Virus record (IMG/VR): IMGVR_UViG_3300027899_000001
Coordinates: 341,017-405,016 of that record
DNA length: 64,000 bases
Reading direction: 5' to 3' (one strand)
The notes beneath the pieces were generated by a model. It made no database searches. It was not told the origin of the DNA and saw only the letters and a program-made list of their open reading frames with translations. Made by a program: the position numbers and the translations under genes. Position 1 is the first letter of the stretch, and each line of letters begins with the position of its first letter. Of the stretch, positions 5,798 to 23,071 are shown piece by piece.

Positions 5798-7501
5798 TTA
5801 GATTTCAATCTTGTTGATTTCATCTATGATTACCTGTGGGTTTATTTCAACCTGAGGAATCTTTTCGTAGATGTCTTGACCGTAGCCGTAAAGACGGAAT
5901 ACTCTGTTTCCACCCTTTATAGGAGCAGTTGCTGCATATCCGCATACGTTGATGATGTATACGTATGGTGTTCCGAACTTCTTGCAGTATCCTGCATAAG
6001 AATTTTCTACATTGCTGTATCCATCCTGTTCGTCAGAGATGATAAGAATTCTATCGTACTGCTTGTTAGTTCTTTCAAACAACTTGAAGCAAGAACCGAA
6101 ATCTGTACCGTGACCGCAACATCCGTTGTAGGACATGAACTTCTGCTTTAACGTATTGATTGAATCGATTGGGTTCCAACCTACAATCTGTTCAGCAGTA
6201 GAAGCGAAATGGTATACATCTCCACCAACACCCTTTGCAAATGTTGCAGCTACAAGTGCAGCCTTGTCAGCTGGCTTCTTATTGATAGCCTTCTTAGGGT
6301 CACCATTAAGATAAATGCTGGAGTATCCACCTTTCATAGAACCTGATGTATCGAATACAACTGCTGTTCTACCTTCTGGAAGCAAGTTCTGAAGGTTTGG
6401 AATTGACAATTCATATGCTGTTGAAAGTGCCTTTGCAACCTTAGCCAACTGTGTTCCGTTGAATTCAAGTGTCATCACTTCAAGAGCAATGTCAATCTGG
6501 TGTGGCCATACAAGAGACTTACGGATGAATTCCTTTTCAACAAGTAAATCGCACGCCTTGTCAAGAAGAACAGTATCATTGGTCTTAAGAATGTTACGTA
6601 CGTTACGAAGTAATGCAAGGTACCCAATCTTCTTAGTTTCAATAAGTTCCTTGTAGTTTTCAGTCTTAGCTTCATTAAGTTCAACAGTTGCCTGTTCCTT
6701 AGTGATAGTTCCAGCCTTAACCTTTTCAGCTACAACCTTTCCTGCTTCAGTATTCTTATCTTCAACAGTGTTGAACTGCTTAAGAACGCCAAGAACAAGA
6801 GCCTTAAGAGTTGGAAGACCAACATTACCATTTTCAGGTGCATCTAAAAGATATTCATCCTTTTCGAACTTAGTACCCTTAACAGCCTTCAAGTATTCAG
6901 CTTCTGATACAAATACTGTTCCATTTATAGGTGTTTCATGTGGGTGCACTAAGTTAACGATGTCAACAAGGCTTACACCACGTGACTTCATCTGGTACTT
7001 AGCTAACTGATATGCATCTGCATGTTCAATTGCATCCTTGAATCCCTTCTTAATAGCGTTTGGAATTGGTGCTTCTACACCATTCTTAGCCTGGTAACAT
7101 GCAAGAATTTCTGCCATGTCATCAAGACGATAAACGATACCTCCACGATTTTCCTTACGGTCTCTCTTAGAGAAGAATCTCTTAGCGATTTCAGAACCTG
7201 CAAGGTGAGGGATTAATTCTACTGCACCGTAATGAGTAACAGAACGCTGTCCAAATACTGTACGTGCATAGATAAGTGCCTTAGCTGCGAATAATGCATT
7301 CTTCTGCGCAACTCTATTGATAACTTCACGGAATCTCTTTTCACGTTCAGTTTCCTTTTCGTAATAAGTATTATCTAAACCAGTAGATAAAATACCAATT
7401 AATTCATGTTCTGGCTTCTGTGTTAAACCAGTTCCACCCTGTAAAGTTACAGTTTCCTTAACTTCTGGGTTGCTTACTCTCTTTTCATTGTACTTTGACA
7501 T
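5798..7501 (-). CDS. rsr: Ro60-related TROVE + vWA RNA-binding protein
   Basis: TROVE features (YARTVFGQRSV, YQLAKY, LVDIVNLVHP, GYLALLRNVRNI) and vWA MIDAS DTSGSM, GTD, IISDEQ. Confidence 0.92.
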   Translation of the reverse strand: MSKYNEKRVSNPEVKETVTLQGGTGLTQKPEHELIGILSTGLDNTYYEKETEREKRFREVINRVAQKNALFAAKALIYARTVFGQRSVTHYGAVELIPHLAGSEIAKRFFSKRDRKENRGGIVYRLDDMAEILACYQAKNGVEAPIPNAIKKGFKDAIEHADAYQLAKYQMKSRGVSLVDIVNLVHPHETPINGTVFVSEAEYLKAVKGTKFEKDEYLLDAPENGNVGLPTLKALVLGVLKQFNTVEDKNTEAGKVVAEKVKAGTITKEQATVELNEAKTENYKELIETKKIGYLALLRNVRNILKTNDTVLLDKACDLLVEKEFIRKSLVWPHQIDIALEVMTLEFNGTQLAKVAKALSTAYELSIPNLQNLLPEGRTAVVFDTSGSMKGGYSSIYLNGDPKKAINKKPADKAALVAATFAKGVGGDVYHFASTAEQIVGWNPIDSINTLKQKFMSYNGCCGHGTDFGSCFKLFERTNKQYDRILIISDEQDGYSNVENSYAGYCKKFGTPYVYIINVCGYAATAPIKGGNRVFRLYGYGQDIYEKIPQVEINPQVIIDEINKIEI

Positions 7502-7795: not shown

Positions 7796-7834
7796 AAAAA
7801 AGCCTGAGTAATTTTTTACGATTTCTCAGGCTTT
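7796..7834 (-). terminator. Intrinsic terminator in the leader of the Ro60 operon
   Basis: AAAGCCUGAG...CUCAGGCUUU 10-bp stem followed by UUUAUUUUU on the minus strand. Confidence 0.8.
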
Positions 7835-7878
7835 GCAATATAATCATAAAGTTCAAGTTATGAGCTATGCAAATAAAA

Positions 7879-7955
7879 GTTGAGAAATCTGAGAAGAGTT
7901 TAAATTGAAAATTCTAATAAAGATCGTTCGATGTAACTCTTTCTCTTACTACAAT
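7879..7955 (-). ncRNA. Y-RNA-like element, copy 1 (Ro60 operon leader)
   Basis: UUGUAGUAA-GAGAAAGAGU-UACAUCG...ACUCUUCUC-AGA-UUUCUCAA; ends pair; conserved with three other copies. Confidence 0.65.
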
Positions 7956-8098
7956 CAATTATATTATTATATATAAAGTCAAAAACTCTTTGTTTTTAGA
8001 CTTAGTGTTAAAATTTTGTTAAAGATTTATTTATTAAAATTATAGTGTAAATATAATAAAAATTCTTGACAGAAAAAACTTTTTATGTTAAAATTTTG

Positions 8099-10522: not shown

Positions 10523-10599
10523 TGGTTGTCCCGGCAAGGCTCGAACTTGAAGTCTTCAGAATCAAAATCTGACGTGTTAACCGATTACACCACGGGACA
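10523..10599 (-). tRNA. tRNA-Gln(UUG), CCA encoded
   Basis: Cloverleaf UGUCCCG/CGGGACA, anticodon arm UCAGA-UUUUGAU-UCUGA, T loop UUCGAGC. Confidence 0.9.
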
Positions 10600-11241
10600 A
10601 TTTATAAAATCTAATAATTTTTCTATTGTAAAATATTTCAATTCATAATATGGTATTCTATATATTCTCCATCCTTTAGATCTTAAAAAATTATCTTTTT
10701 TCATATCATGTTCAACCCTTTTTAATCCGTTAGTAAAATGAGGTTCTCCATCATATTCAATAGCAATTTTTTGATCAACAAAAGCAAAATCTATAAAATA
10801 AGGATAAATTGGATATTCATTTATAATTGAATATTTTTCATAAAAACTATTATCTTTAAGCATTTTATTTATTATGCTTTCTCCTTTACTCATCAATCTT
10901 TTATGTCTATTTGTAAAAGTTGAAATATTATTTTCATCAGATAAATAGTCAAAACGTTTTTGTCTTAAAATTTCTTTAGATTGTTCGTTATGATGTTTAT
11001 CCTTGAATGCGTTAGTTATGTTTCCTTCTTTATAATTTTGTTTTAATGTGTTTGATTGTTGTAAAATAGACGCATTATTATGTTTTGTTTTTCCTTTTGC
11101 CCAGTGTATTTTTTCACCAGTTTTCAATGTTTTTCCCGTATCATGTGCTTTACCTTCTTCTGTATGAGTCCTCCAAATATGGCCTTTAATTCCATATTTA
11201 TTATATTCTTTTTCGCAATAAGGACATTTCATACAATACAT
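10585..11241 (-). CDS. Free-standing endonuclease (C2H2 finger + DUF559/Vsr-like domain)
   Basis: CPYC...HIWRTH; YFIDFAF...IAIEYDGEPH...D..L...GWRIYRI. Confidence 0.85.
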   Translation of the reverse strand: MYCMKCPYCEKEYNKYGIKGHIWRTHTEEGKAHDTGKTLKTGEKIHWAKGKTKHNNASILQQSNTLKQNYKEGNITNAFKDKHHNEQSKEILRQKRFDYLSDENNISTFTNRHKRLMSKGESIINKMLKDNSFYEKYSIINEYPIYPYFIDFAFVDQKIAIEYDGEPHFTNGLKRVEHDMKKDNFLRSKGWRIYRIPYYELKYFTIEKLLDFINCPVV

Positions 11242-12813: not shown

Positions 12814-12910
12814 GTGTATAAATGTTTAGTTAATAAAAAATTTATATTTATATATATGTTAAAAGTTTTATATTTTGATGTAAACAAAATGATATTTGAT
12901 GTAAAATTTG

Positions 12911-12983
12911 TCCCTCTAGAGAGATTCGAACTCTCGACACGCGGGATTAGAAGCCGCTGGTCTGACCACTGACCTATAGAGGG
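12911..12983 (-). tRNA. tRNA with anticodon CUA (amber suppressor)
   Basis: 73-nt canonical cloverleaf CCCUCUA UA GGUC AGUGGUCA GACC A GCGGC UUCUAAU CCCGC GUGUC GAGAG UUCGAAU CUCUC UAGAGGG A; standard numbering puts CUA at 34-36; C31:C39 mismatch. Confidence 0.8.
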
Positions 12984-16213: not shown

Positions 16214-16272
16214 TTTTTATTTTATAGTGTAAATATAATAAAAAGATTTGACAGAAAAAAATATTTAAGCAA

Positions 16273-16578
16273 CTATTTTTCAGTTTCTACAAAATTTTCA
16301 TCTATAAAATTTGATAACTTTTTTGCTTCTGTTGGAGTTAATAAAATTTCATCTAAATGCATTTTACCTGTTTTCATATAGTGCCACATTACTTTCAATT
16401 TATCCCAAAATCTCGGTTTTTCTGAATAATTTCCATAACTAAACATTGCTAAAGTAAATTCTTGTCTTACTCTAGTTGTTTTAGATATCGTATCGTCAAA
16501 GTATTCTGTTTCACTTTGTACTACTAATAAATGTGCTCCACATTCACATTCAATTATGGTTTTCTTTGTTTCTTCCAT
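16273..16578 (-). CDS. Hypothetical protein
   Basis: 101-aa ORF with CECGAH. Confidence 0.7.
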   Translation of the reverse strand: MEETKKTIIECECGAHLLVVQSETEYFDDTISKTTRVRQEFTLAMFSYGNYSEKPRFWDKLKVMWHYMKTGKMHLDEILLTPTEAKKLSNFIDENFVETEK

Positions 16579-16944: not shown

Positions 16945-17136
16945 TTATATTAATTTAACATTAATTGCATTCAATCCTTTTGGTCCTTCTTTTAAATCGA
17001 ATTCGACTTTGTCGTTTTCGTTAATAGTATCTACACATCCTGTTACGTGTACAAAATACTCTTTAGAATCTCTGTTGTCTTTGATAAATCCAAATCCTTT
17101 AACTGAGTTAAAAAATTTTACTGTTCCTTCATTCAT
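16945..17136 (-). CDS. csp: Cold-shock protein
   Basis: GTVKFFN..KGFGFI, FVHV, GPKGLNAINV. Confidence 0.95.
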   Translation of the reverse strand: MNEGTVKFFNSVKGFGFIKDNRDSKEYFVHVTGCVDTINENDKVEFDLKEGPKGLNAINVKLI

Positions 17137-17184
17137 ATTATTAATTTATTTTAATTAGCATAGACACTATGTCTATGTTTACTT

Positions 17185-17550
17185 TTAACCATGTTCCATT
17201 TGTGAGTCATATTCAATTGCTTCAATAACTGAAACTGTTATATCTTTTATATCATCTATTTCTTTTATTTCCTTTTCCCAAAAGTGATTTGATATAAGTC
17301 TAGAATCTAATTCTTCATAGTTTACAATTTCTGTATATCCTGCTCCATAACCACTTCTTTTATTATATTCTGCTCTTTGGCTTATCCAATCATTTAGGGC
17401 GTCAATAAACATATCTCTTTTCATTTTTATTAAACAAAATTTATCGTCAGAATAATATCCATAATTACCTGGTAGCCATACATAATCTTCATCTGCTAAA
17501 ACTATTGTTAAACCATCAAAATTAAATGTTACTAATTCTTTTTCTTTCAT
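17185..17550 (-). CDS. Hypothetical protein
   Basis: 121-aa ORF. Confidence 0.65.
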   Translation of the reverse strand: MKEKELVTFNFDGLTIVLADEDYVWLPGNYGYYSDDKFCLIKMKRDMFIDALNDWISQRAEYNKRSGYGAGYTEIVNYEELDSRLISNHFWEKEIKEIDDIKDITVSVIEAIEYDSQMEHG

Positions 17551-18350
17551 GATATTAATTTTTTAAATTCTTCTATTTGTTTATATAATTTTTCTTTATT
17601 AATTTCATTTATAGGGTTAACCCATTTTATTCTAATAACTTTCCACTCATGCTGTAATAAAAAATCATCTTTTATTTTATCTTTTTCTTTTCGTTCTTCA
17701 TGTTGTTTTCCATCTATTTCTAAAGCTATTTTTTTATCTACAAATGCAAAATCAATCCACCATCTATTAACTTTATAGTCTCTATGCCATCCAGTTATAT
17801 TTTCATTTTCAAATAAAGATATAAAGTATTTTTCAGGATATGATGGCGCATTATCTTTTCTAGATTTCCATCCTATAAAAGTTCCGTTTGCAATTCTTTC
17901 GTGTGCTTTATCAGAAATCTTTTTCTTAGCAGATTCACTACAACCATGGTGTTTTCTTGCACATTCTCTAGAACAATATATTCGCCTTTTATATCTTGTT
18001 TTATATTCTTTTTTACATTCAGGACATATTTTTTGAATATATTCTAATGATAATATATCAGTTTCATGCTGTTTATACCTTAGAGTTTTTCCTATTTTTT
18101 CTTTAGTTTCTTTACTTAATATACGTTTTTTATTGTTGAAAGAATTTGAACAGCTTTTAGAACAAAAAGTACTATAGCGATGTTTATAATCAAAACCAAC
18201 ATTACAATTTTTACATTTTTTAGGAGCTTTATTATATTCAGCTATTCTTTTTTGTTTTAATAATGATAGTTTTTCTCTTCCTTTTTTAAATGCATTTCTT
18301 GCATTTTCTTGATGTTTTAATGAACCTTGATAATTTTTATCTTTAGACAT
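17547..18350 (-). CDS. Free-standing endonuclease (Cys-rich N-terminus + DUF559/Vsr-like domain)
   Basis: CKNC..FCSKSC, CPEC..YCSREC; SYPEKYF, WIDFAF...LEIDGKQH. Confidence 0.85.
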   Translation of the reverse strand: MSKDKNYQGSLKHQENARNAFKKGREKLSLLKQKRIAEYNKAPKKCKNCNVGFDYKHRYSTFCSKSCSNSFNNKKRILSKETKEKIGKTLRYKQHETDILSLEYIQKICPECKKEYKTRYKRRIYCSRECARKHHGCSESAKKKISDKAHERIANGTFIGWKSRKDNAPSYPEKYFISLFENENITGWHRDYKVNRWWIDFAFVDKKIALEIDGKQHEERKEKDKIKDDFLLQHEWKVIRIKWVNPINEINKEKLYKQIEEFKKLIS

Positions 18351-18410
18351 ATTGTTTTTATATTATATATCTAAAAATTAGTCGAGTTTTAATTATTCGA
18401 ACAAAAAATG

Positions 18411-18490
18411 TAGGGTGAACGGGATTCGAACCCGCGTAAAAACTCCTGATCCCAAATCAGGCGAGATAAACCTGGCTCCTCTACCACCCT
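18411..18490 (-). tRNA. tRNA-Pro(UGG)
   Basis: CCUGA-UUUGGGA-UCAGG anticodon arm. Confidence 0.88.
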
Positions 18491-18498
18491 ATTTATTG

Positions 18499-18582
18499 TG
18501 CTCTCTGTCGGACTCGAACCGACATCCATTTAAGGACAGCTTCTTAGGCTGATGCGTCTTATTCCAGTTGCGCCAAGAGAGC
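18499..18582 (-). tRNA. tRNA-Leu(AAG)
   Basis: CAGC-CUAAGAA-GCUG arm; body nearly identical to tRNA-Leu(UAG) at 18678. Confidence 0.85.
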
Positions 18583-18588
18583 ATTTTG

Positions 18589-18673
18589 TGCCTCTGAAGG
18601 GAGTCGAACCCTCATGGTCTTTCGACCCACGGATTTTAAGTCCGTTGCGTACTACCAATTTCGCCACAGAGGC
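18589..18673 (-). tRNA. tRNA-Leu(UAA)
   Basis: ACGGA-CUUAAAA-UCCGU, long variable arm. Confidence 0.92.
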
Positions 18674-18677
18674 ATTG

Positions 18678-18761
18678 TGCTCTCTGTCGGACTCGAACCG
18701 ACATCCAACTAAGGCGTGCTCCTAAGGCACGTGCGTCTTAATCCAGTTGCGCCAAGAGAGC
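18678..18761 (-). tRNA. tRNA-Leu(UAG)
   Basis: CGUGC-CUUAGGA-GCACG. Confidence 0.9.
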
Positions 18762-18791
18762 AAAAATCAACATGTCAAAGACCTAAAATTG

Positions 18792-18864
18792 TGGAGCAAA
18801 TTGTATCGAAACAATACCTTATGTTCTTCAGACATACGTGACACACCTATTACACCATTGCTCC
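18792..18864 (-). tRNA. tRNA-Phe(GAA), atypical T arm
   Basis: UAUGU-CUGAAGA-ACAUA; T arm AUUGU-UUCGAU-ACAAU lacks G53:C61. Confidence 0.75.
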
Positions 18865-18867
18865 ATT

Positions 18868-18918
18868 TATGGCTGGTGATTTGAATCCCATTTAATCGTT
18901 CTACCTTAACGAACCATA
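18868..18918 (-). ncRNA. Mini tRNA-like element lacking an anticodon arm
   Basis: UAUGGUU/AGCCAUA stem, D-like hairpin CGUU-AAGGUAG-AACG, T-like UUCAAAU loop. Confidence 0.45.
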
Positions 18919-18929
18919 TTTTTTATTTG

Positions 18930-19010
18930 CTGCCCTGAGTGGATTCGAACCACTATCCCAAGTTTCAAAGACTCAGATAATTAACTTTCGCACCTTTATA
19001 CGACAGGGCA
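18930..19010 (-). tRNA. tRNA-Gln(UUG) with enlarged D loop
   Basis: U1:A72, G73, loop CUUUGAA; D region contains extra GCGAAAGU. Confidence 0.8.
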
Positions 19011-19012
19011 AT

Positions 19013-19086
19013 AAACTGAGAAATTCGGTTAGAGCATTTTTTCTAATTTCCAGGTTTCGAAGTATCTCTTTACCTTACTACAGTTT
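19013..19086 (-). ncRNA. Y-RNA-like element, copy 2
   Basis: AAACUGUAGUAA-GGUAAAGAGA-UACUUCG...GCUCUAACC-GAA-UUUCUCAGUUU; fills the spacer between two tRNA-Gln genes. Confidence 0.65.
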
Positions 19087-19087
19087 G

Positions 19088-19162
19088 CTGTTCTACCTGG
19101 ATTCGAACCAGGATGGACCTGGCTTCAGAGGCCAGCGCGATATCCAGTTACGCTATAGAACA
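19088..19162 (-). tRNA. tRNA-Gln(CUG)
   Basis: CUGGC-CUCUGAA-GCCAG, U1:A72, G73. Confidence 0.9.
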
Positions 19163-19166
19163 ATTT

Positions 19167-19248
19167 AAGTTGAGAAATGTGGAGTGAGTGTCTTTTTTAT
19201 TAGATTTGCATGTCTTTTACGAAGTAACTCATTTCCTTACTACAACTT
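19167..19248 (-). ncRNA. Y-RNA-like element, copy 3
   Basis: AAGUUGUAGUAA-GGAAAUGAGU-UACUUCG...ACUCACUCC-ACA-UUUCUCAACUU. Confidence 0.65.
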
Positions 19249-19905
19249 TATATTAAATATTTTTTCATAATTTTGAATATCTGATAAAAATATCATTTCA
19301 ATATTATTATAATTACTCAAAATATATCTCATTTTCTTTTTATCTTCTTCTTCATATCTTCCTTTAACTTCAAAGAACTTTTTTAAATTTGGACACCAAA
19401 AATCTGGATAATATGTGTGAATTTCCCCGAATTCATTTGTCCAAGATAAACCATCAGAAAAAGGCTTTATCCAATCTTTATCTATAATATTTAAAATAAC
19501 TGCGAAACGTTTTTCATAGGTTCCTTGTACTTTTATCTTTGTTCCATCAGGTTTTATAATTTCATACCATTTACATTTTCCGCCAGTTATCCATCCTTTA
19601 TTATTTATAGATATTTTTCTTTTTGTTTCTAAATCTCTTGGACCATTTTTTCTTCCTTTCAATTTAGAAGGTCTTCCTTTTTTAGTATCCCAAACTCTAT
19701 TTTCAGAATGAATAGCCCAAATATGAAATTTTACGCCTCTAGGATTATCATATTCTTTTTCACATATTGGACATTTATGAAAACCATTAGGTTGTTTATA
19801 AATATTAACTTTATTTTGTCTATTACCACATTTTTCATAATGTTTCTTAAAATTTGATAAACTTATTTCTTTATTACATTTATCACAAATTCTTTTATTT
19901 ACCAT
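19240..19905 (-). CDS. Free-standing endonuclease (zinc fingers + TnsA-like PD-(D/E)XK)
   Basis: CDKC..H...C, CPIC..H...H; QGTYE, YYPDF...FEVKG. Confidence 0.85.
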   Translation of the reverse strand: MVNKRICDKCNKEISLSNFKKHYEKCGNRQNKVNIYKQPNGFHKCPICEKEYDNPRGVKFHIWAIHSENRVWDTKKGRPSKLKGRKNGPRDLETKRKISINNKGWITGGKCKWYEIIKPDGTKIKVQGTYEKRFAVILNIIDKDWIKPFSDGLSWTNEFGEIHTYYPDFWCPNLKKFFEVKGRYEEEDKKKMRYILSNYNNIEMIFLSDIQNYEKIFNIKL

Positions 19906-19951
19906 ATTTTTATTTTATATATTCATATAGTAATTCTTTAATTTACTACTT

Positions 19952-20000
19952 AATGTAACACTTGTTCATTACTACATTGCTGAGAAAGCCGAAAAGTGTG
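19952..20000 (-). ncRNA. Circularly permuted Y-RNA-like element, copy 4
   Basis: ACACUUUUC-GGC-UUUCUCA GCAA UGUAGUAAU-GAACAAGUGU-UACAUU: the two conserved strands in reversed order joined by a GNRA loop. Confidence 0.6.
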
Positions 20001-20029
20001 TAATTAGCTTTTAACTTTTCCCCCATTTG

Positions 20030-20112
20030 AGACCGAGAAGGGATTCGAACCCTTGTGAGCTTTCGCTAATGGTTTTGCAGACCATCCTTTTCAACCACTC
20101 AAGCACTCAGTC
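20030..20112 (-). tRNA. tRNA-Cys(GCA) with long variable arm
   Basis: AUGGU-CUGCAAA-ACCAU, U73, variable arm AGC-GAAA-GCU. Confidence 0.85.
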
Positions 20113-20145
20113 AAATTTTATTCCAATATTTCAAATAACTTATAA

Positions 20146-20181
20146 TGCAAATATAATACTAATTTCTGAATTAAAAAAATA
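20146..20181 (-). promoter_or_regulatory. Bacteroidota sigma-A-type promoter (TAnnTTTG) upstream of tRNA array; representative of about 16 similar sites
   Basis: Minus-strand TTTTTTTAATTCAGAAATTAGTATTATATTTGCA; near-identical motifs at about 2667, 8045, 8694, 16227, 20228, 26715, 32798, 35664, 36946, 38563, 41096, 42163 (minus) and 42385, 43402 (plus), nearly all just upstream of a gene start. Confidence 0.7.
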
Positions 20182-20298
20182 TTTTTGCATTTATTTTCTA
20201 TTTTTTTTACTTATCTTAAAAATTGTATACAAATATAAACAATAATCTTGATATAAAAAAATAATTTAACACTTATTTTAAAGAACTATATAAACAAA

Positions 20299-20323
20299 GA
20301 ACCCTCCGTATTTTGGAGGGTTC
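20299..20323 (-). terminator. Terminator of putative attenuator upstream of tRNA array
   Basis: GAACCCUCC-AAAAUAC-GGAGGGUUC followed by UUUGUUUAU. Confidence 0.75.
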
Positions 20324-20351
20324 AGAAAGGAGTATATAATAAATGATATTA

Positions 20352-20462
20352 TTACCTACGCTTAACTATTCCCTCCGTTTTAACAAAATAACATAACGGT
20401 AGCTGCTCGCTAACTTGTGGGAGTTGTTGTGAAAAAGAAGAATATGTAGGTTTCAATATCAT
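20352..20462 (-). promoter_or_regulatory. Putative 36-aa leader peptide
   Basis: MILKPTYSSFSQQLPQVSEQLPLCYFVKTEGIVKRR*; contains ACGGAGGG duplicating the terminator 3' strand. Confidence 0.5.
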
Positions 20463-20554
20463 CACTTAATATTTCTTAATTTTAATATATATCAATGTAT
20501 ATTTGTAAATTATATATACTGAATGCAAAAAGTTTTAAAAAAATGAAAAATAAT

Positions 20555-20776
20555 TTAATCATTAAAAATTTTAACCAAATATAATGCTTCTTGTCTTTGT
20601 AAAAGTTCTTCATTTAATCTATCATGCAGATCTTCTATATTTACTAAACCATTCTTTTTGGCTGCTTTAACGTAATTATTTATTAGAACCTTACAATTAG
20701 TTATCTGATCTTCATTTTGACAAGAATTTATAATTCCTAATATTTTTTTAACTGGTACAGAATTTTTATTTTTCAT
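20555..20776 (-). CDS. Hypothetical protein
   Basis: 73-aa ORF. Confidence 0.65.
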   Translation of the reverse strand: MKNKNSVPVKKILGIINSCQNEDQITNCKVLINNYVKAAKKNGLVNIEDLHDRLNEELLQRQEALYLVKIFND

Positions 20777-20793
20777 GGCATTATATAATTTTT

Positions 20794-21192
20794 TTATTTC
20801 ATTGTTATCTTATACGTGTGACTATCATCTAAAGAATACGGAGTTCCTCTTCTAGTATAAACACGAACTTCATAAATTCTATCAGACATATTTACACTAC
20901 TAAAGTCTAATTTTATTTTAACTACTTCTATAGAAATATTTTTAGCCCATTTATATGTGTTAAAATTAAAAAAATCACCCGTTATTATTTTTCCTAATAA
21001 TTTTTGTTTAAATAATTTGCGTAATTGAGCACGTCTTTTTTTAATTATAGTACTAATGTCTTTTTGTACATTTGTATAATATATTTCATTTTGATCTCTT
21101 AAAATAAAATTCTCTTTGTATCCTATACCCATATCTTTTACTGGATCGGAATCTTCAACAAATTTTTCATTTATATGTTCTTTAACTATCAT
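20794..21192 (-). CDS. EKF-SDP-MGIG leader family protein
   Basis: N-terminus MIVKEHINEKFVEDSDPVKDMGIG shared with five other ORFs. Confidence 0.8.
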   Translation of the reverse strand: MIVKEHINEKFVEDSDPVKDMGIGYKENFILRDQNEIYYTNVQKDISTIIKKRRAQLRKLFKQKLLGKIITGDFFNFNTYKWAKNISIEVVKIKLDFSSVNMSDRIYEVRVYTRRGTPYSLDDSHTYKITMK

Positions 21193-21195
21193 AAT

Positions 21196-21602
21196 TTAAA
21201 TCATTCTTAATGTATACATATTTTTGTAGTCTTCTAAAACAAAAGAATTTCCATCTTCATCATATACGCGAACTTCAGAAAGAGTATCACACCCATATCC
21301 ATCATGAAAACTTACTCTTATTCTAACTACATTTACAGTTTTATTTTTTAGTGGTCTATAATAATCTCCTTTTTTAACTAAAAAAGTTCCTGTCATTTCT
21401 TTACCAACTAGTTTTTCTTTTAATTCTTTACGTAAAGTTTTTCTATATTTTTCTACTATCTTTTGAAATTGTTGATATGTGTATGAACCATATTCTTTTT
21501 TTGTTTAGAAAAATCATATTCTTCCTTATGACCTATACCCATTTGACGAATAGGATCACCTTCTTCTTTAAACTTTTCAAATATATGTTCTTTAACTATC
21601 AT
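21196..21602 (-). pseudogene. EKF-SDP-MGIG leader family protein split by a -1 frame break at A_AAA_AAG (21495-21501)
   Basis: MIVKEHIFEKFKEEGDPIRQMGIG... frame ends at TAG; the -1 frame joins the 21196..21396 ORF and restores similarity to both paralogous neighbours. Confidence 0.75.
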
Positions 21603-21889
21603 GCGGGTATTCTCCAATGTGTTTTTAAAAATTCTTCTTCAGTATTAAAAGTTGTTATATCAATATTTTTTGTTATTATAAAATTATACCATAATTGTTC
21701 CCATTGATCAACATTTTGTAATTTTCCTGCTTTGTGTCTTTTCATTAGATCTTTTACATAATTCCAATTATTTATAATTTCTAAAACAGTTTCATTATGA
21801 ATTATATATTCAGGCACGGACTGTTGAGCTTGCATATTTTGTTGTCCTGGTCCAAAGAACGCTTGAAAAAAATGTGGTGGTTGTTGCAT
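21599..21889 (-). CDS. Hypothetical protein, Gln-rich N-terminus
   Basis: 96-aa ORF. Confidence 0.6.
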   Translation of the reverse strand: MQQPPHFFQAFFGPGQQNMQAQQSVPEYIIHNETVLEIINNWNYVKDLMKRHKAGKLQNVDQWEQLWYNFIITKNIDITTFNTEEEFLKTHWRIPA

Positions 21890-21896
21890 ATTTATT

Positions 21897-22289
21897 TTAT
21901 TTAGCTGTTATTACATATTCTTGTTCACCCCAACTAGAGGTATTCATATTATATTTTCTTCCTTTATTTGATGTTACTATTAATTCTCTTACATATCCAT
22001 AATCTAAATCTACTACAACTTCAACACTTTTTATTAATAATGATCTTGTCATTTCTTTATATTCTGTAAAAAAATCACCCGTCACAATTTTTCCAACAAA
22101 TTTTTCACTCAGTTCTTTTTGTAATGAACTTTCCATTATTTTTAAAAGTTTTCTTTTTTCTTTATTAAATTTTTTCGCGTGAGTTGTACATAACACTTCC
22201 ATATCAATTTTTTCTTTGTATCCTATACCCATATCGTGTATAGGATCAGATTGTTCCTGAAATTTTTCAAATATGAAGTGAGCTTTCAT
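21897..22289 (-). CDS. EKF-SDP-MGIG leader family protein
   Basis: MKAHFIFEKFQEQSDPIHDMGIG; body similar to 20794..21192 (GKI.TGDFF). Confidence 0.8.
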   Translation of the reverse strand: MKAHFIFEKFQEQSDPIHDMGIGYKEKIDMEVLCTTHAKKFNKEKRKLLKIMESSLQKELSEKFVGKIVTGDFFTEYKEMTRSLLIKSVEVVVDLDYGYVRELIVTSNKGRKYNMNTSSWGEQEYVITAK

Positions 22290-22294
22290 TTAGA

Positions 22295-23071
22295 TTATTT
22301 TATTTTGAATAATTTTCTAAATAATCCTCGTGATGCTTTATGAGCATCTGCTTTTGCTGATAGATTTTCAGGATTTGAATCAGCATCAATAGCAGTCCAA
22401 ACTTCCCACTGAAATCCCCATTCAGCAAAAGGAAAATAAGTATATCCTTGATCGCCCCATTCTGCTGTCCATGAATTTCTAATAATAAATTTATCTTTAA
22501 GATATCCAGCAACACAAACTGCATGTCCACCTAACATTTCTTGACCAGTAAAATCTGGTTTCCAAAAATCCATTTTATCTGAATTAAATACTGGAAATGC
22601 AATATAACAAGGTCCATTAGCAAATAAAGCTTTTTTAAGTGAATCTACTGTATTGATTTGAGCATATCCTTGAATTTTATATTTAGCTGCTTTAAATTTT
22701 AATTCTGGCGTAATAGCTTTAAATTGTCCATAAGGATAATCTTTTTCTGTAACAATTCCAATCTTATATAAAATATCCATTGTATCTCTTGGTGTCATTC
22801 CAGAAGATTCTTGATTTGATCTTAAATTATATACAAATTGAGGTGATAAATATTCTCTAAGTTCAACATCTGTTAATTCTTCCCATTCTTTAAGTGCTGC
22901 TGCAGTTTGTGCAGAGCATGTACCTTGCTGACCTTGATCTCTTACTGGTCTCATTTGAGGTCTCAAATCCCATATTTCTGGAAGAACTACTCTGTTAGGA
23001 TATATTGATTCTAACATAAAGTCCCTTTTATCTACGGGAGATTTTTCAAGATTAAATAAATACTTTTGCAT
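22295..23071 (-). CDS. Papain-like C1 family cysteine peptidase
   Basis: DQGQQGTCSA, LSPQFVY, GGHAV, IIRNSW...WGDQGY catalytic motifs. Confidence 0.92.
   Translation of the reverse strand: MQKYLFNLEKSPVDKRDFMLESIYPNRVVLPEIWDLRPQMRPVRDQGQQGTCSAQTAAALKEWEELTDVELREYLSPQFVYNLRSNQESSGMTPRDTMDILYKIGIVTEKDYPYGQFKAITPELKFKAAKYKIQGYAQINTVDSLKKALFANGPCYIAFPVFNSDKMDFWKPDFTGQEMLGGHAVCVAGYLKDKFIIRNSWTAEWGDQGYTYFPFAEWGFQWEVWTAIDADSNPENLSAKADAHKASRGLFRKLFKIK

What the first reader, a model, noticed from the sequence alone, without database searches (positions are those of the whole stretch)
19952..20000. Circularly permuted copy of the Y-like motif closed by a GNRA tetraloop
Seen: the two conserved strands occur in reversed order and are joined by GCAA where the other copies have free 5'/3' ends, while their mutual pairing is retained. 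It sits between tRNA-Cys and an endonuclease gene. Inference: natural permutation supports the motif as a real structural module and makes it an internal, cis-acting protein-binding site on the tRNA precursor or endonuclease mRNA.
Basis: seen in the sequence. Interest (0 to 1): 0.7.

Follow-up and report, generated by a model that had tools for sequence, protein, structure and literature searches.

The report
Truncated tRNA-shaped permuted Y-like RNA
The 49-base feature is real: it is the core of a circularly permuted, tRNA-shaped version of the phage's Ro60-associated Y-like RNA, a form conserved in other phages, but this copy has lost its 3' third to an inserted endonuclease gene and is probably a remnant.

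Summary
Observation confirmed. On the minus strand, 20000..19952 carries the family's 3'-type strand (UUUCUCA), then GCAA, then its 5'-type strand (UGUAGUAA). Ten base pairs are kept between the flanks.

A covariance model built only from other phages finds this site at 55 bits, E about 7e-10. It is the only hit in the 405 kb genome.

It is not a junction of two copies. Eleven intact relatives, including orthologs downstream of tRNA-Cys (L173, L306, L166), show a discrete 120-136 nt RNA in tRNA order: a 7 bp acceptor stem, the Y module in place of the anticodon arm, a hairpin in the variable-arm position, a T arm, discriminator A and usually an encoded CCA. The capping helix covaries (CA/UG, UG/CA, CU/AG). 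In one subgroup the cap is always GNRA (GCAA or GUAA).

This is the circular permutation of the standard YrlA-like form, which is also present here next to a TROVE/Ro60 gene.

The window's copy is about 90% identical to L173 up to UACAU (19953). A homing-endonuclease cassette then replaces the invariant CG, the variable-arm hairpin, the T arm and the acceptor 3' strand.

A designed cis-acting site on the precursor or mRNA is not supported. The best reading is a recently truncated gene remnant.

The parts
20029..20112 (-). tRNA-Cys (GCA), 84 nt with a long variable arm. It lies directly upstream of the element. A tRNA-Cys lies upstream of the permuted element in L173, L306, L166 and L178 too, directly or after a short spacer.
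20018..20024 (-). GGGGGAA, the acceptor-stem 5' strand of the tRNA-order Y-like RNA. Its 3' partner is missing from this genome.
   Evidence: 7/7 or 6/7 pairing with the 3' strand in 11 intact relatives. No UUCCCCC within 3 kb downstream. No partner with a T arm anywhere in the genome.
20001..20017 (-). A-rich linker with a small D-arm-position hairpin (AGUU-AAA-AGCU). It is conserved with L173 and L306.
   Evidence: The L306 minimum-free-energy fold shows this hairpin.
19990..19999 (-). 3'-type strand of helix P2. ACACUU is P2b and UUCG is P2a.
19983..19989 (-). Conserved internal-loop strand GC-UUUCU. It corresponds to the 3' strand RRN-UUUCU of the standard copies.
19975..19982 (-). Residual helix P1 (CA/UG, 2 bp) capped by the GNRA tetraloop GCAA. 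In standard copies P1 is closed by the RNA's 5' and 3' flanks.
   Evidence: P1 is 100% paired with three pair combinations. The cap is GCAA or GUAA in 8 sequences and 8-10 nt in the others.
19969..19974 (-). Conserved internal-loop strand UAGUAA. It corresponds to the 5' strand of the standard copies.
19958..19968 (-). 5'-type strand of P2: UGAA (P2a), bulged C, AAGUGU (P2b).
19953..19957 (-). UACAU, the remnant of the invariant UAC-N-UCG box. Homology with orthologs ends between 19953 and 19952, which is the truncation point.
   Evidence: Invariance of the box.
19906..19952 (-). 5' flank of the endonuclease cassette. It includes a degenerate standard-type 5' strand, AGUAGUAAAUUAAAGAAUUAC, at 19930-19950. 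A similar AGUAGUAAA-containing leader precedes the homologous endonuclease gene in L173.
19240..19905 (-). 221-aa zinc-finger plus nuclease ORF, a putative free-standing homing endonuclease. It replaces the 3' third of the element. Its stop codons UAG UAA lie inside the 5' strand of copy c2.
   Evidence: weak Pfam matches, below the cut-offs. Homolog at a different site in L173.
19164..19251 (-). Standard Y-like copy c2, short form, followed by tRNA-Gln(CUG).
   Evidence: 75.7 bits
19010..19089 (-). Standard Y-like copy c3, short form, between tRNA-Gln and a degenerate tRNA.
   Evidence: 74.2 bits
7874..7960 (-). Standard Y-like copy c1. It stands alone, with promoter-like repeats upstream and a terminator downstream, and lies upstream of the Ro60 gene.
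   Evidence: 71.2 bits
5798..7501 (-). 567-aa TROVE-domain protein, a Ro60 homolog and the presumed protein partner of the family.
   Evidence: (TROVE 36.4 bits, cut-off 23). (PDB 9L5Y/9KOP, Thermus phage Ro60, E 5e-14).

Best explanation
The 49-mer is the Y module of a tRNA-order Y-like RNA gene: helix P2, a conserved internal loop (UAGURA opposite UUUCU), a 2 bp P1 and a GNRA cap.

This phage family encodes one RNA design in two connectivities. In the standard, YrlA-like form the 5' and 3' ends close P1, and the top of P2 carries UAC-N-UCG followed either by a short loop or by a tRNA-like domain whose acceptor stem is closed by a loop. In the tRNA-order form the acceptor stem is open, usually with an encoded A-CCA end, and P1 is closed by a loop. 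The Y module therefore sits where a tRNA has its anticodon arm.

The intact form sits among tRNA genes, abutting or close to its neighbours. It would be released by the enzymes that trim tRNA ends (inferred). The Y module would bind the phage Ro60 protein (inferred from gene linkage and from the YrlA analogy).

In this window a homing-endonuclease cassette has replaced everything 3' of UACAU. The copy has lost the invariant CG, the hairpin in the variable-arm position, the T arm, the acceptor 3' strand and CCA. It is most likely a recently disabled remnant that is transcribed between tRNA-Cys and the endonuclease ORF.
For: Shown:
- The standard family has covarying P1 and P2 helices: 14 seed copies, score 0.476 against 0.190 shuffled. 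There are 103 hits, 73 unique.
- Long standard members have the YrlA layout of variable arm, T arm, acceptor with CCA, loop, acceptor, D arm.
- A Ro60/TROVE gene lies next to c1. TROVE-like ORFs occur in 2 of 3 other family-bearing phage fragments, one of them below the Pfam cut-off. In one, a family hit lies just upstream of the ORF.
- There are 11 intact tRNA-order members. Acceptor stems pair 7/7 in 8 and 6/7 in 3. T arms pair 5/5 in 8. Nine of the 11 end in A-CCA.
- Where the upstream sequence was read, they follow a tRNA directly or after a short spacer, and no standard 5' strand lies between.
- The permuted core covaries: 93.4% of cells paired, score 0.418 against 0.197 shuffled, slid controls at most 0.10.
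- Model R2, built without the window, hits the window at 55 bits.
- The window is about 90% identical to L173 from the tRNA-Cys 3' end through UACAU. Homology then stops, and a cassette homologous to an endonuclease gene located elsewhere in L173 begins.
- No acceptor 3' partner exists in the genome.
- Without that partner, the orphan GGGGGAA strand is predicted to pair into the module.
Against: - No RNA data exist. The only public run is the source DNA sample, kept as contigs. Transcription, processing and Ro60 binding are all inferred.
- P1, P2 and both loop strands are fully intact in the remnant, so residual binding activity cannot be excluded.
- The role of UAC-N-UCG in protein contact rests on analogy with the GNCGAA/CGAA motif of YrlA and phage Yrl RNAs. 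The match to that motif is inexact.
- No Rfam family matches any form.
- No relative lacking the endonuclease at exactly this genome's locus was found. The pre-insertion state is inferred from L173, L306 and L166.
Confidence: 0.75

Rival explanations
1. One reading: the permuted module is a working internal, cis-acting Ro60-binding site on the pre-tRNA or endonuclease transcript. It might, for example, recruit Ro60 and an exonuclease to process or control that transcript.
For: - The module's helices and both conserved loop strands are intact.
- A terminator lies upstream of the promoter-like repeats. No terminator-like site was found from tRNA-Cys through the endonuclease ORF and copy c3, so co-transcription is plausible.
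- Endonuclease genes often sit beside these elements.
Against: - All intact relatives are separate tRNA-shaped RNAs with their own ends.
- Homology to orthologs stops abruptly at the cassette.
- The CG that is invariant in all 73 standard and all 11 intact permuted copies is lost.
- The predicted fold of the remnant favours pairing of the orphan acceptor strand into the module.
- No second example of a truncated-plus-endonuclease arrangement was found.
Confidence: 0.15
2. The feature is only the junction of two adjacent truncated standard copies. The 3' strand would belong to one copy and the 5' strand to the next.
For: - Tandem standard copies are common. Examples are c6-c4 in this genome and pairs in L012 and L148.
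- Model R2 also picks up such junctions at about 28 bits.
- I saw a weak similarity of the flanking A/U-rich stretches.
Against: - Standard model R1 finds no copy on either side: best 3.6 bits with filters off.
- The 4 nt linker leaves no room for two P1 strands.
- The two strands share the rare U-A pair in P2b. That pair type occurs in about 1 of 73 standard copies, so they are cognate partners.
- Orthologs place an acceptor 5' strand upstream and a T arm with an acceptor 3' strand downstream, between neighbouring tRNA genes.
Confidence: 0.03
3. The module is real, but it is not a Ro60 site. The family could be spacer or processing structures of tRNA arrays, targets of homing endonucleases, or partners of another tRNA-binding factor.
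For: - Most copies lie between tRNA genes, far from the TROVE gene.
- The motif does not match the published GNCGAA consensus exactly.
- No Rfam Y RNA family matches.
- One family-bearing fragment showed no TROVE gene, but that fragment is only 8% complete.
Against: - Stand-alone copies with their own promoter and terminator sit directly upstream of TROVE genes on the same strand, here and in L310.
- The long forms reproduce the YrlA architecture.
- The Ro60 homolog's nearest solved relative is a phage Ro60 shown to bind CGAA-containing Yrl RNAs (PMC12135203).
Confidence: 0.25

Closest known systems
YrlA (bacterial and phage Y RNA-like A; Chen et al. 2014, PMC4201824; structure preprint 10.1101/312249)
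   Same: - It is encoded next to a Ro60/TROVE gene on the same strand.
- A long stem is formed by the 5' and 3' ends.
- A conserved ..CGAA-type box lies on the 5' strand.
- The effector domain mimics tRNA, with variable, T and D arms and an acceptor stem closed by a loop. This is seen in the long standard members of this family.
- The authors already describe YrlA as resembling a circularly permuted tRNA.
   Different: - The feature studied here has the opposite connectivity. The acceptor stem is open, usually with an encoded CCA, and the Ro-type stem is capped by a loop, so the RNA is in tRNA order.
- The conserved internal loop (UAGURA opposite UUUCU) and the UAC-N-UCG box differ from the published GNCGAAN0-1G consensus.
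- Most copies lie inside phage tRNA arrays rather than beside rsr.
- No D arm of normal size is present in the tRNA-order form.
[quoted passage not shown]
   Same: It is a Y RNA whose acceptor stem is open and carries CCA. This is the same end state as the tRNA-order form.
   Different: There the open form is made by cutting a closed-loop precursor into two pieces. Here it is encoded directly as one continuous, permuted gene.
Thermus phage phiLo Ro60 with Yrl1/Yrl2 (PMC12135203; PDB 9L5Y, 9KOP)
   Same: It is a phage-encoded Ro60 with Y-like RNAs just upstream that contain a CGAA motif. The window's TROVE protein matches this protein (E 5e-14).
   Different: The Yrl RNAs are described as stem-bulge-stem RNAs in standard connectivity. 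No tRNA-order isoform or tRNA-array copies are reported.
Circularly permuted tRNA genes of red algae and an archaeon (cited in 10.1101/312249)
   Same: Two connectivities of one tRNA-like fold exist in nature.
   Different: Those genes are permuted precursors that are processed back to normal tRNAs. Here the tRNA-order RNA has no anticodon loop and cannot decode.

Membership tests
YrlA-type Y RNA (applied to the family as a whole) | Encoded within about 4 kb of a Ro60/TROVE gene, on the same strand | tested here: met
   c1 (7960..7874) lies about 370 nt upstream of the TROVE ORF (7501..5798), on the same strand. An R1 hit lies just upstream of the TROVE ORF in L310. The 49-mer itself is about 12.5 kb away.
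YrlA-type Y RNA (applied to the family as a whole) | GNCGAAN0-1G motif near the 5' end (proposed Ro60 contact) | tested here: inconclusive
   The family has an invariant UAC-N-UCG box, often followed by AA, giving UCGAA. It shares CGAA with the published motif but not the leading G. The window's permuted copy has UACAUUA, so the CG is lost.
YrlA-type Y RNA (applied to the family as a whole) | tRNA-like domain with T and D arms and an acceptor stem closed by a loop | tested here: met
   Present in long standard members, for example L148, L170, L011b and this genome's c5. Absent from the short copies c1-c3.
YrlA-type Y RNA (applied to the family as a whole) | Match to a curated RNA family model | tested here: not met
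   No Rfam 15 hit other than tRNA, in the window or in four family-rich loci at E up to 1-10.
YrlA-type Y RNA (applied to the family as a whole) | Bound by Ro60 in vivo or in vitro | not testable with these tools
   This needs pull-down or binding assays.
tRNA-order (permuted) Y-like RNA class defined here (applied to the window's copy) | Core: P2 3'-type strand, UUUCU, P1 with cap, UAGURA, P2 5'-type strand, all with standard pairs | tested here: met
   R2 scores 55 bits with 11 of 11 pairs standard.
tRNA-order (permuted) Y-like RNA class defined here (applied to the window's copy) | Acceptor 5' strand a few nucleotides downstream of the preceding tRNA | tested here: met
   GGGGGAA at 20024..20018, four nucleotides after tRNA-Cys.
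tRNA-order (permuted) Y-like RNA class defined here (applied to the window's copy) | Invariant UAC-N-UCG box after the P2 5'-type strand | tested here: not met
   UACAUUA in the window. All 11 intact members have UAC-N-UCG.
tRNA-order (permuted) Y-like RNA class defined here (applied to the window's copy) | T arm, acceptor 3' strand and discriminator, usually followed by CCA | tested here: not met
   Replaced by the endonuclease cassette. No complementary strand within 3 kb or anywhere in the genome.

The most novel reading that the evidence does not exclude
The tRNA-order Y-like RNAs are a working class of their own. They would be tRNA-shaped Ro60 partners that are cut out of tRNA arrays by the tRNA end-processing enzymes and carry a free CCA end. 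They could then bring Ro60 to tRNA-handling machinery, or act as decoys or repair cofactors in phage-host conflicts over tRNA. They would also represent the missing intermediate between an ordinary tRNA and the permuted YrlA architecture. A further, less likely extension is that the truncated copy in this window still recruits Ro60 in cis to the tRNA-Cys and endonuclease transcript.
Probability: 0.4. Interest if true: 0.8.

Novelty: new variant of a known kind. Interest (0 to 1): 0.62.

Why it matters
Y RNAs and their Ro60 partner are conserved from bacteria to humans. How they arose, and what the tRNA-like half of bacterial Y RNAs does, remain open questions. The authors of the YrlA structure speculated that YrlA derives from tRNA and resembles a circularly permuted tRNA.

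Here both connectivities of one design co-exist in the same phage contigs. The tRNA-order form has an open acceptor stem, usually an encoded CCA, and the Ro-type stem in place of the anticodon arm.

This gives a natural permutation experiment showing that the conserved loop-helix module is an autonomous structural unit. It offers a plausible evolutionary bridge between tRNA and Y RNA. It also provides concrete RNAs for testing whether the Ro60 site is the internal loop, the UCG box or both.

For this particular window the practical message is more modest. The copy is a casualty of homing-endonuclease traffic in a megaphage tRNA array.

Tried and rejected
- Megablast of 17000-23000 against deposited phages gave no match.
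- Rfam, at gathering thresholds and at permissive E-values, gave only tRNAs.
- Fold energies of the 49-mer, the 99-mer and the 72 nt remnant are not better than shuffles. Energy alone neither supports nor refutes the module.
Only L192/L243 were useful. Tighter patterns then worked.
- An exact tRNA-Cys 3' pattern found only a fragment identical to this genome, IMGVR_UViG_3300003860_000007. No very close independent relative is available.
- I first entertained a partial tandem duplication, with overlapping A/U-rich apical pieces on either side of the junction. I dropped it once L173 showed that the downstream piece belongs to the endonuclease cassette.
- MAFFT could not align the full tRNA-order RNAs consistently, because of one-base register shifts and different cap lengths. 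The covariance model was therefore limited to the 52 nt core, seeded from five sequences. It misses L178, which was recognised by hand.
- Laying the only available public run, which is contigs of the source sample, showed no variant without the endonuclease.
- Two scans of 185,579 prokaryote genomes, followed by model R1, found no family member. This is a limited test based on exact patterns.
- No complex prediction was run, because the tool gives no verdict for RNA-protein pairs.

Full report
**Setting**

The window is the last 64 kb of a 405,016 bp virus record with direct terminal repeats and 29-30% G+C. Its minus strand carries a large tRNA array interspersed with nuclease ORFs: 14 tRNA genes in the window and 17 more just upstream. 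The finding lies between tRNA-Cys (20112..20029) and a 221-aa zinc-finger/nuclease ORF (19905..19240).

**The observation**

All of the following is read on the minus strand.
- ACACUU-UUCG at 19999..19990.
- GC-UUUCU at 19989..19983.
- CA at 19982..19981.
- GCAA at 19980..19977.
- UG at 19976..19975.
- UAGUAA at 19974..19969.
- UGAA-C-AAGUGU at 19968..19958.
- UACAU at 19957..19953.

In those copies UGUAGUAAG comes first and UUUCUCA last. The description is therefore accurate: the two conserved strands are in reversed order, joined by a GNRA tetraloop, and ten base pairs are kept between their flanks.

**The standard family**

Pattern scans of viral and metagenome collections, followed by covariance model R1, gave 103 hits, 73 of them unique, in 50 loci. 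The architecture is as follows.
- P1 is formed by 4-5 flanking bases plus UG/CA.
- An internal loop has UAGURA on the 5' side and RRN-UUUCU on the 3' side.
- P2a is followed by an A-rich bulge and then P2b.
- An invariant UAC-N-UCG box follows.
- An apical part of variable size closes the RNA.

P1 and P2 covary. On the 14-copy seed alignment the score is 0.476 against 0.190 for shuffles, with 0 of 500 shuffles reaching it, and slid controls are at most 0.16. The U-A pair at the inner end of P1 switches to A-U in nine copies. UAC-N-UCG is invariant in all 73 unique copies. That includes the 32 copies that were not retrieved through a pattern fixing those bases.

In long members the apical part runs variable arm, T arm, acceptor 3' strand with CCA, a loop, acceptor 5' strand, D arm. 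This is the layout published for YrlA (PMC4201824; 10.1101/312249). This genome holds three short copies (c1-c3) and three long ones just upstream of the window (c5, c4, c6).

**The link to Ro60**

- The ORF at 7501..5798 is a TROVE-domain protein: 36.4 bits against a cut-off of 23.
- Its nearest solved relatives are the Thermus phage phiLo Ro60 entries 9L5Y and 9KOP, at E 5e-14. That protein was shown to bind CGAA-containing Y-like RNAs encoded upstream of its gene (PMC12135203).
- c1 sits about 370 nt upstream of this ORF on the same strand. It has promoter-like repeats before it and a terminator after it.
- Two of three other family-bearing phage fragments also encode TROVE-like ORFs, one of them below the Pfam cut-off. 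In one of them an R1 hit lies just upstream of the ORF.

**Is the permuted piece a junction of two copies?**

Tandem standard copies are common, so this had to be tested. The evidence is against it.
- R1 finds no standard copy on either side, even with filters off on the 161 nt around the site. The best score is 3.6 bits.
- Four linker bases leave no room for two P1 strands.
- The two P2b strands share a U-A pair at a position where about 1 of 73 standard copies has that pair type. They are therefore cognate partners.
- The same arrangement recurs in other phages, embedded in a larger conserved RNA.

**The tRNA-order class**

Eleven intact members were found: L173, L306, L166, L010, L192 (identical to L243), L304 (identical to L305), L144, L307, L156, L165 and L178. 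They share this order.
- A 7 nt acceptor 5' strand.
- A short A-rich linker, with a small D-position hairpin in some members.
- The P2 3'-type strand, then UUUCU.
- A 2-3 bp P1 with a cap.
- UAGURA, then the P2 5'-type strand.
- UAC-N-UCG.
- A hairpin in the variable-arm position, seen in the members inspected (L010, L192, L304, L173, L156).
- A 5 bp T arm with a 7 nt loop.
- The acceptor 3' strand and discriminator A.
- CCA, in 9 of the 11.

Acceptor stems pair 7/7 in eight members and 6/7 in three. T arms pair 5/5 in eight. Where the upstream sequence was read, they follow a tRNA gene directly or after a short spacer, and no standard 5' strand lies between. In L304/L305 a coding region precedes the element instead.

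P1 occurs as CA/UG, UG/CA and CU/AG. P2b occurs in at least six complementary versions. The cap is GCAA or GUAA in the eight sequences of two subgroups, and 8-10 nt in the others.

On a model-guided alignment of the cores, 93.4% of cells are paired. The covariation score is 0.418 against 0.197 for shuffles, with 0 of 500 shuffles reaching it, and slid controls are at most 0.10. That alignment is fitted to the model and so leans towards its structure.

Model R2 was built from five of these cores without the window's sequence. It finds the window's copy at 55 bits, E 7.4e-10, as the only hit in the 405 kb genome.

The tRNA-order form is exactly what results from opening a long standard member at its acceptor loop and closing P1 with a loop. 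Both forms occur side by side in the same contigs, for example L144, L156 and L165.

**The window's copy is truncated**

L173 is a syntenic relative. Its order is tRNA-Cys, the element, tRNA-Gln(CUG), a c2-like copy, tRNA-Gln(UUG), a small hairpin, tRNA-Phe. It also carries a suppressor-type tRNA(CUA).

From the 3' part of tRNA-Cys through UACAU the two sequences are about 90% identical. None of the differences breaks a pair, and one of them changes the tetraloop between GUAA and GCAA. Directly after UACAU the homology ends.
- L173 continues with CG, the variable-arm hairpin, the T arm and the acceptor 3' strand.
- The window continues with an A/U-rich leader and the nuclease ORF.

That ORF has a homolog in L173 at a different place, after tRNA-Phe, preceded by a similar AGUAGUAAA-containing leader. 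No sequence complementary to GGGGGAA occurs within 3 kb downstream, and none with a T arm occurs anywhere in the genome.

In the remnant, the orphan acceptor strand is predicted to pair with the module's own UUUCUC and ACUUUU stretches. The minimum free energy is -9.1 kcal/mol, z +0.2. In the intact relatives the minimum-free-energy folds keep the acceptor stem and T arm.

Decay of such elements is seen elsewhere. L158 has an internal deletion of the P2 5'-type strand. L304/L305 have a nuclease-like ORF in place of the upstream tRNA.

**How it most likely works**

Shown:
- The module's structure and its conservation in two connectivities.
- Its placement in tRNA arrays.
- The linkage of the family to a phage Ro60 gene.
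- The truncation of this copy.

Inferred:
- Intact tRNA-order RNAs are released from array transcripts by RNase P and 3'-end processing, because they present a 7 bp acceptor stem, a T arm and usually A-CCA, like a tRNA. As precedent, M. smegmatis YrlA is cleaved by RNase P and receives CCA (PMC4201824).
- The Y module binds the phage Ro60. The loop strands and the UCG box are the candidate contacts.
- The tRNA-like half engages tRNA-handling factors.

For this window, a terminator (20323..20299) followed by promoter-like repeats lies upstream of tRNA-Cys. No terminator-like site was found from there through c3. The remnant is therefore probably transcribed as part of the leader of the nuclease mRNA, but as a by-product of the insertion rather than as a designed site. 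I put about 0.15 on residual cis activity.

**Comparison with what is known**

Phage-encoded Ro60 proteins with adjacent Y-like RNAs are known. Chen et al. 2014 list 22 phages, and phiLo was described in 2025. YrlA has been described as resembling a circularly permuted tRNA, with speculation that some YrlAs might be processed to look more like tRNAs (10.1101/312249).

In three full-text searches and the papers read, I found no description of the following.
- A genomically encoded tRNA-order isoform.
- This family's conserved internal loop.
- The spread of such RNAs through tRNA arrays.

No Rfam family matches. I therefore file it as a new variant of a known kind, with membership in YrlA proper left open. 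The gene-linkage and architecture criteria are met. The consensus-motif criterion is only approximately met. The curated-model criterion is not met. Binding is untested.

**Verdict**

The "natural permutation, real module" inference is supported. The "internal cis-acting site" inference is not supported. The specific copy is a truncated remnant.

Main caveats:
- There is no expression or binding evidence.
- The covariance model for the permuted core was seeded from only five sequences, an effective three.
- Most retrieval depended on exact-pattern scans, which bias apparent invariance. I controlled for this partly, by counting the copies that were not retrieved by pattern.

Noticed in passing
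window 7796-7836 (minus strand), with c1 at 7874-7960; also L012, L016, L018: The terminator after standard copy c1 has a 5' arm, CUGAGAAAUCG, that is complementary to c1's conserved 3' strand GAUUUCUCA. The same pairing recurs with compensating changes in three other phage contigs (GGUUUUCUCA with UGAGAAAACC or UGAGAAGACC). It could be an antiterminator/terminator switch ahead of the 76-aa ORF and the Ro60 gene, possibly responsive to Ro60 binding. Model R1 also hits the plus strand of this hairpin at 17.7 bits.
   Followed up: partly
window 12910-12983 (minus strand); L173 105-179: A suppressor-type tRNA with anticodon CUA, which ARAGORN labels Pyl, is present here and in the related contig. 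The nuclease ORF ends with UAG followed directly by UAA, both inside the conserved UGUAGUAAG of copy c2. Whether UAG is read through in this phage was not examined.
   Followed up: no
window 20029-20112 (minus strand): tRNA-Cys(GCA) is 84 nt with a long variable arm, which is unusual for tRNA-Cys. The orthologous tRNA-Cys in L173 is 74 nt.
   Followed up: no
window 20338-20462 (minus strand): A G+C-richer 125 nt stretch has a long closing stem (9 + 6 bp) formed by its two ends, just upstream of a strong terminator at 20323..20299. The fold z-score is -1.75 and there is no Rfam match. It is a candidate structured RNA of another kind.
   Followed up: partly
window 18866-18937 and 18938-19001 (minus strand); L173 minus strand around 1000-1125: A degenerate tRNA (19.3 bits) sits where L173 has tRNA-Gln(UUG). 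It is followed by a small hairpin with a T-loop-like GGAUUCAAAUC sequence that is conserved between the two phages.
   Followed up: no
window 10585-11241, 17547-18350, 19240-19905 (minus strand); 19930-19950: Three zinc-finger plus nuclease ORFs are scattered through the tRNA array. Two have DUF559/Vsr-like domains over the Pfam cut-off, and the third has only weak nuclease matches. They share DNA repeats. The leader of the third carries a degenerate standard-type 5' strand, AGUAGUAAAUUAAAGAAUUAC, that again breaks off right after UUACU. This hints that the UAC-N-UCG box may be a homing site.
   Followed up: partly
window 8035-8070, 16222-16286, 20140-20204, 20222-20286: A repeated A/T-rich promoter-like element (TGTCAA ... 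TATATTTACACTATAA on the minus strand) precedes c1, tRNA-Cys and another transcription unit. It is probably the phage's own promoter type.
   Followed up: no
L306 about 6040-6160 (plus strand) and L156 (minus strand), just 3' of their tRNA-order copies: A conserved stretch of roughly 110 nt (UAGAUAAACCAGCUUCCGUGCACGC ... GGAAUAAUUAAGGCAAUGUAG ... GCGUAUCAUUGAUCUAACUGGAGUCUAU) follows the tRNA-order RNA in two different subgroups. There was no Rfam hit in L156; L306 was not scanned. It is not present in the window.
   Followed up: no
genome 335965-336087, 339320-339590 and 339596-339832 (just upstream of the window; L136): Three long standard copies (c5, c4, c6) lie in the upstream part of the same tRNA array. 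c5 carries a clear T arm, a closed acceptor stem with CCA, and a D arm. c6 and c4 are tandem, 6 nt apart.
   Followed up: yes
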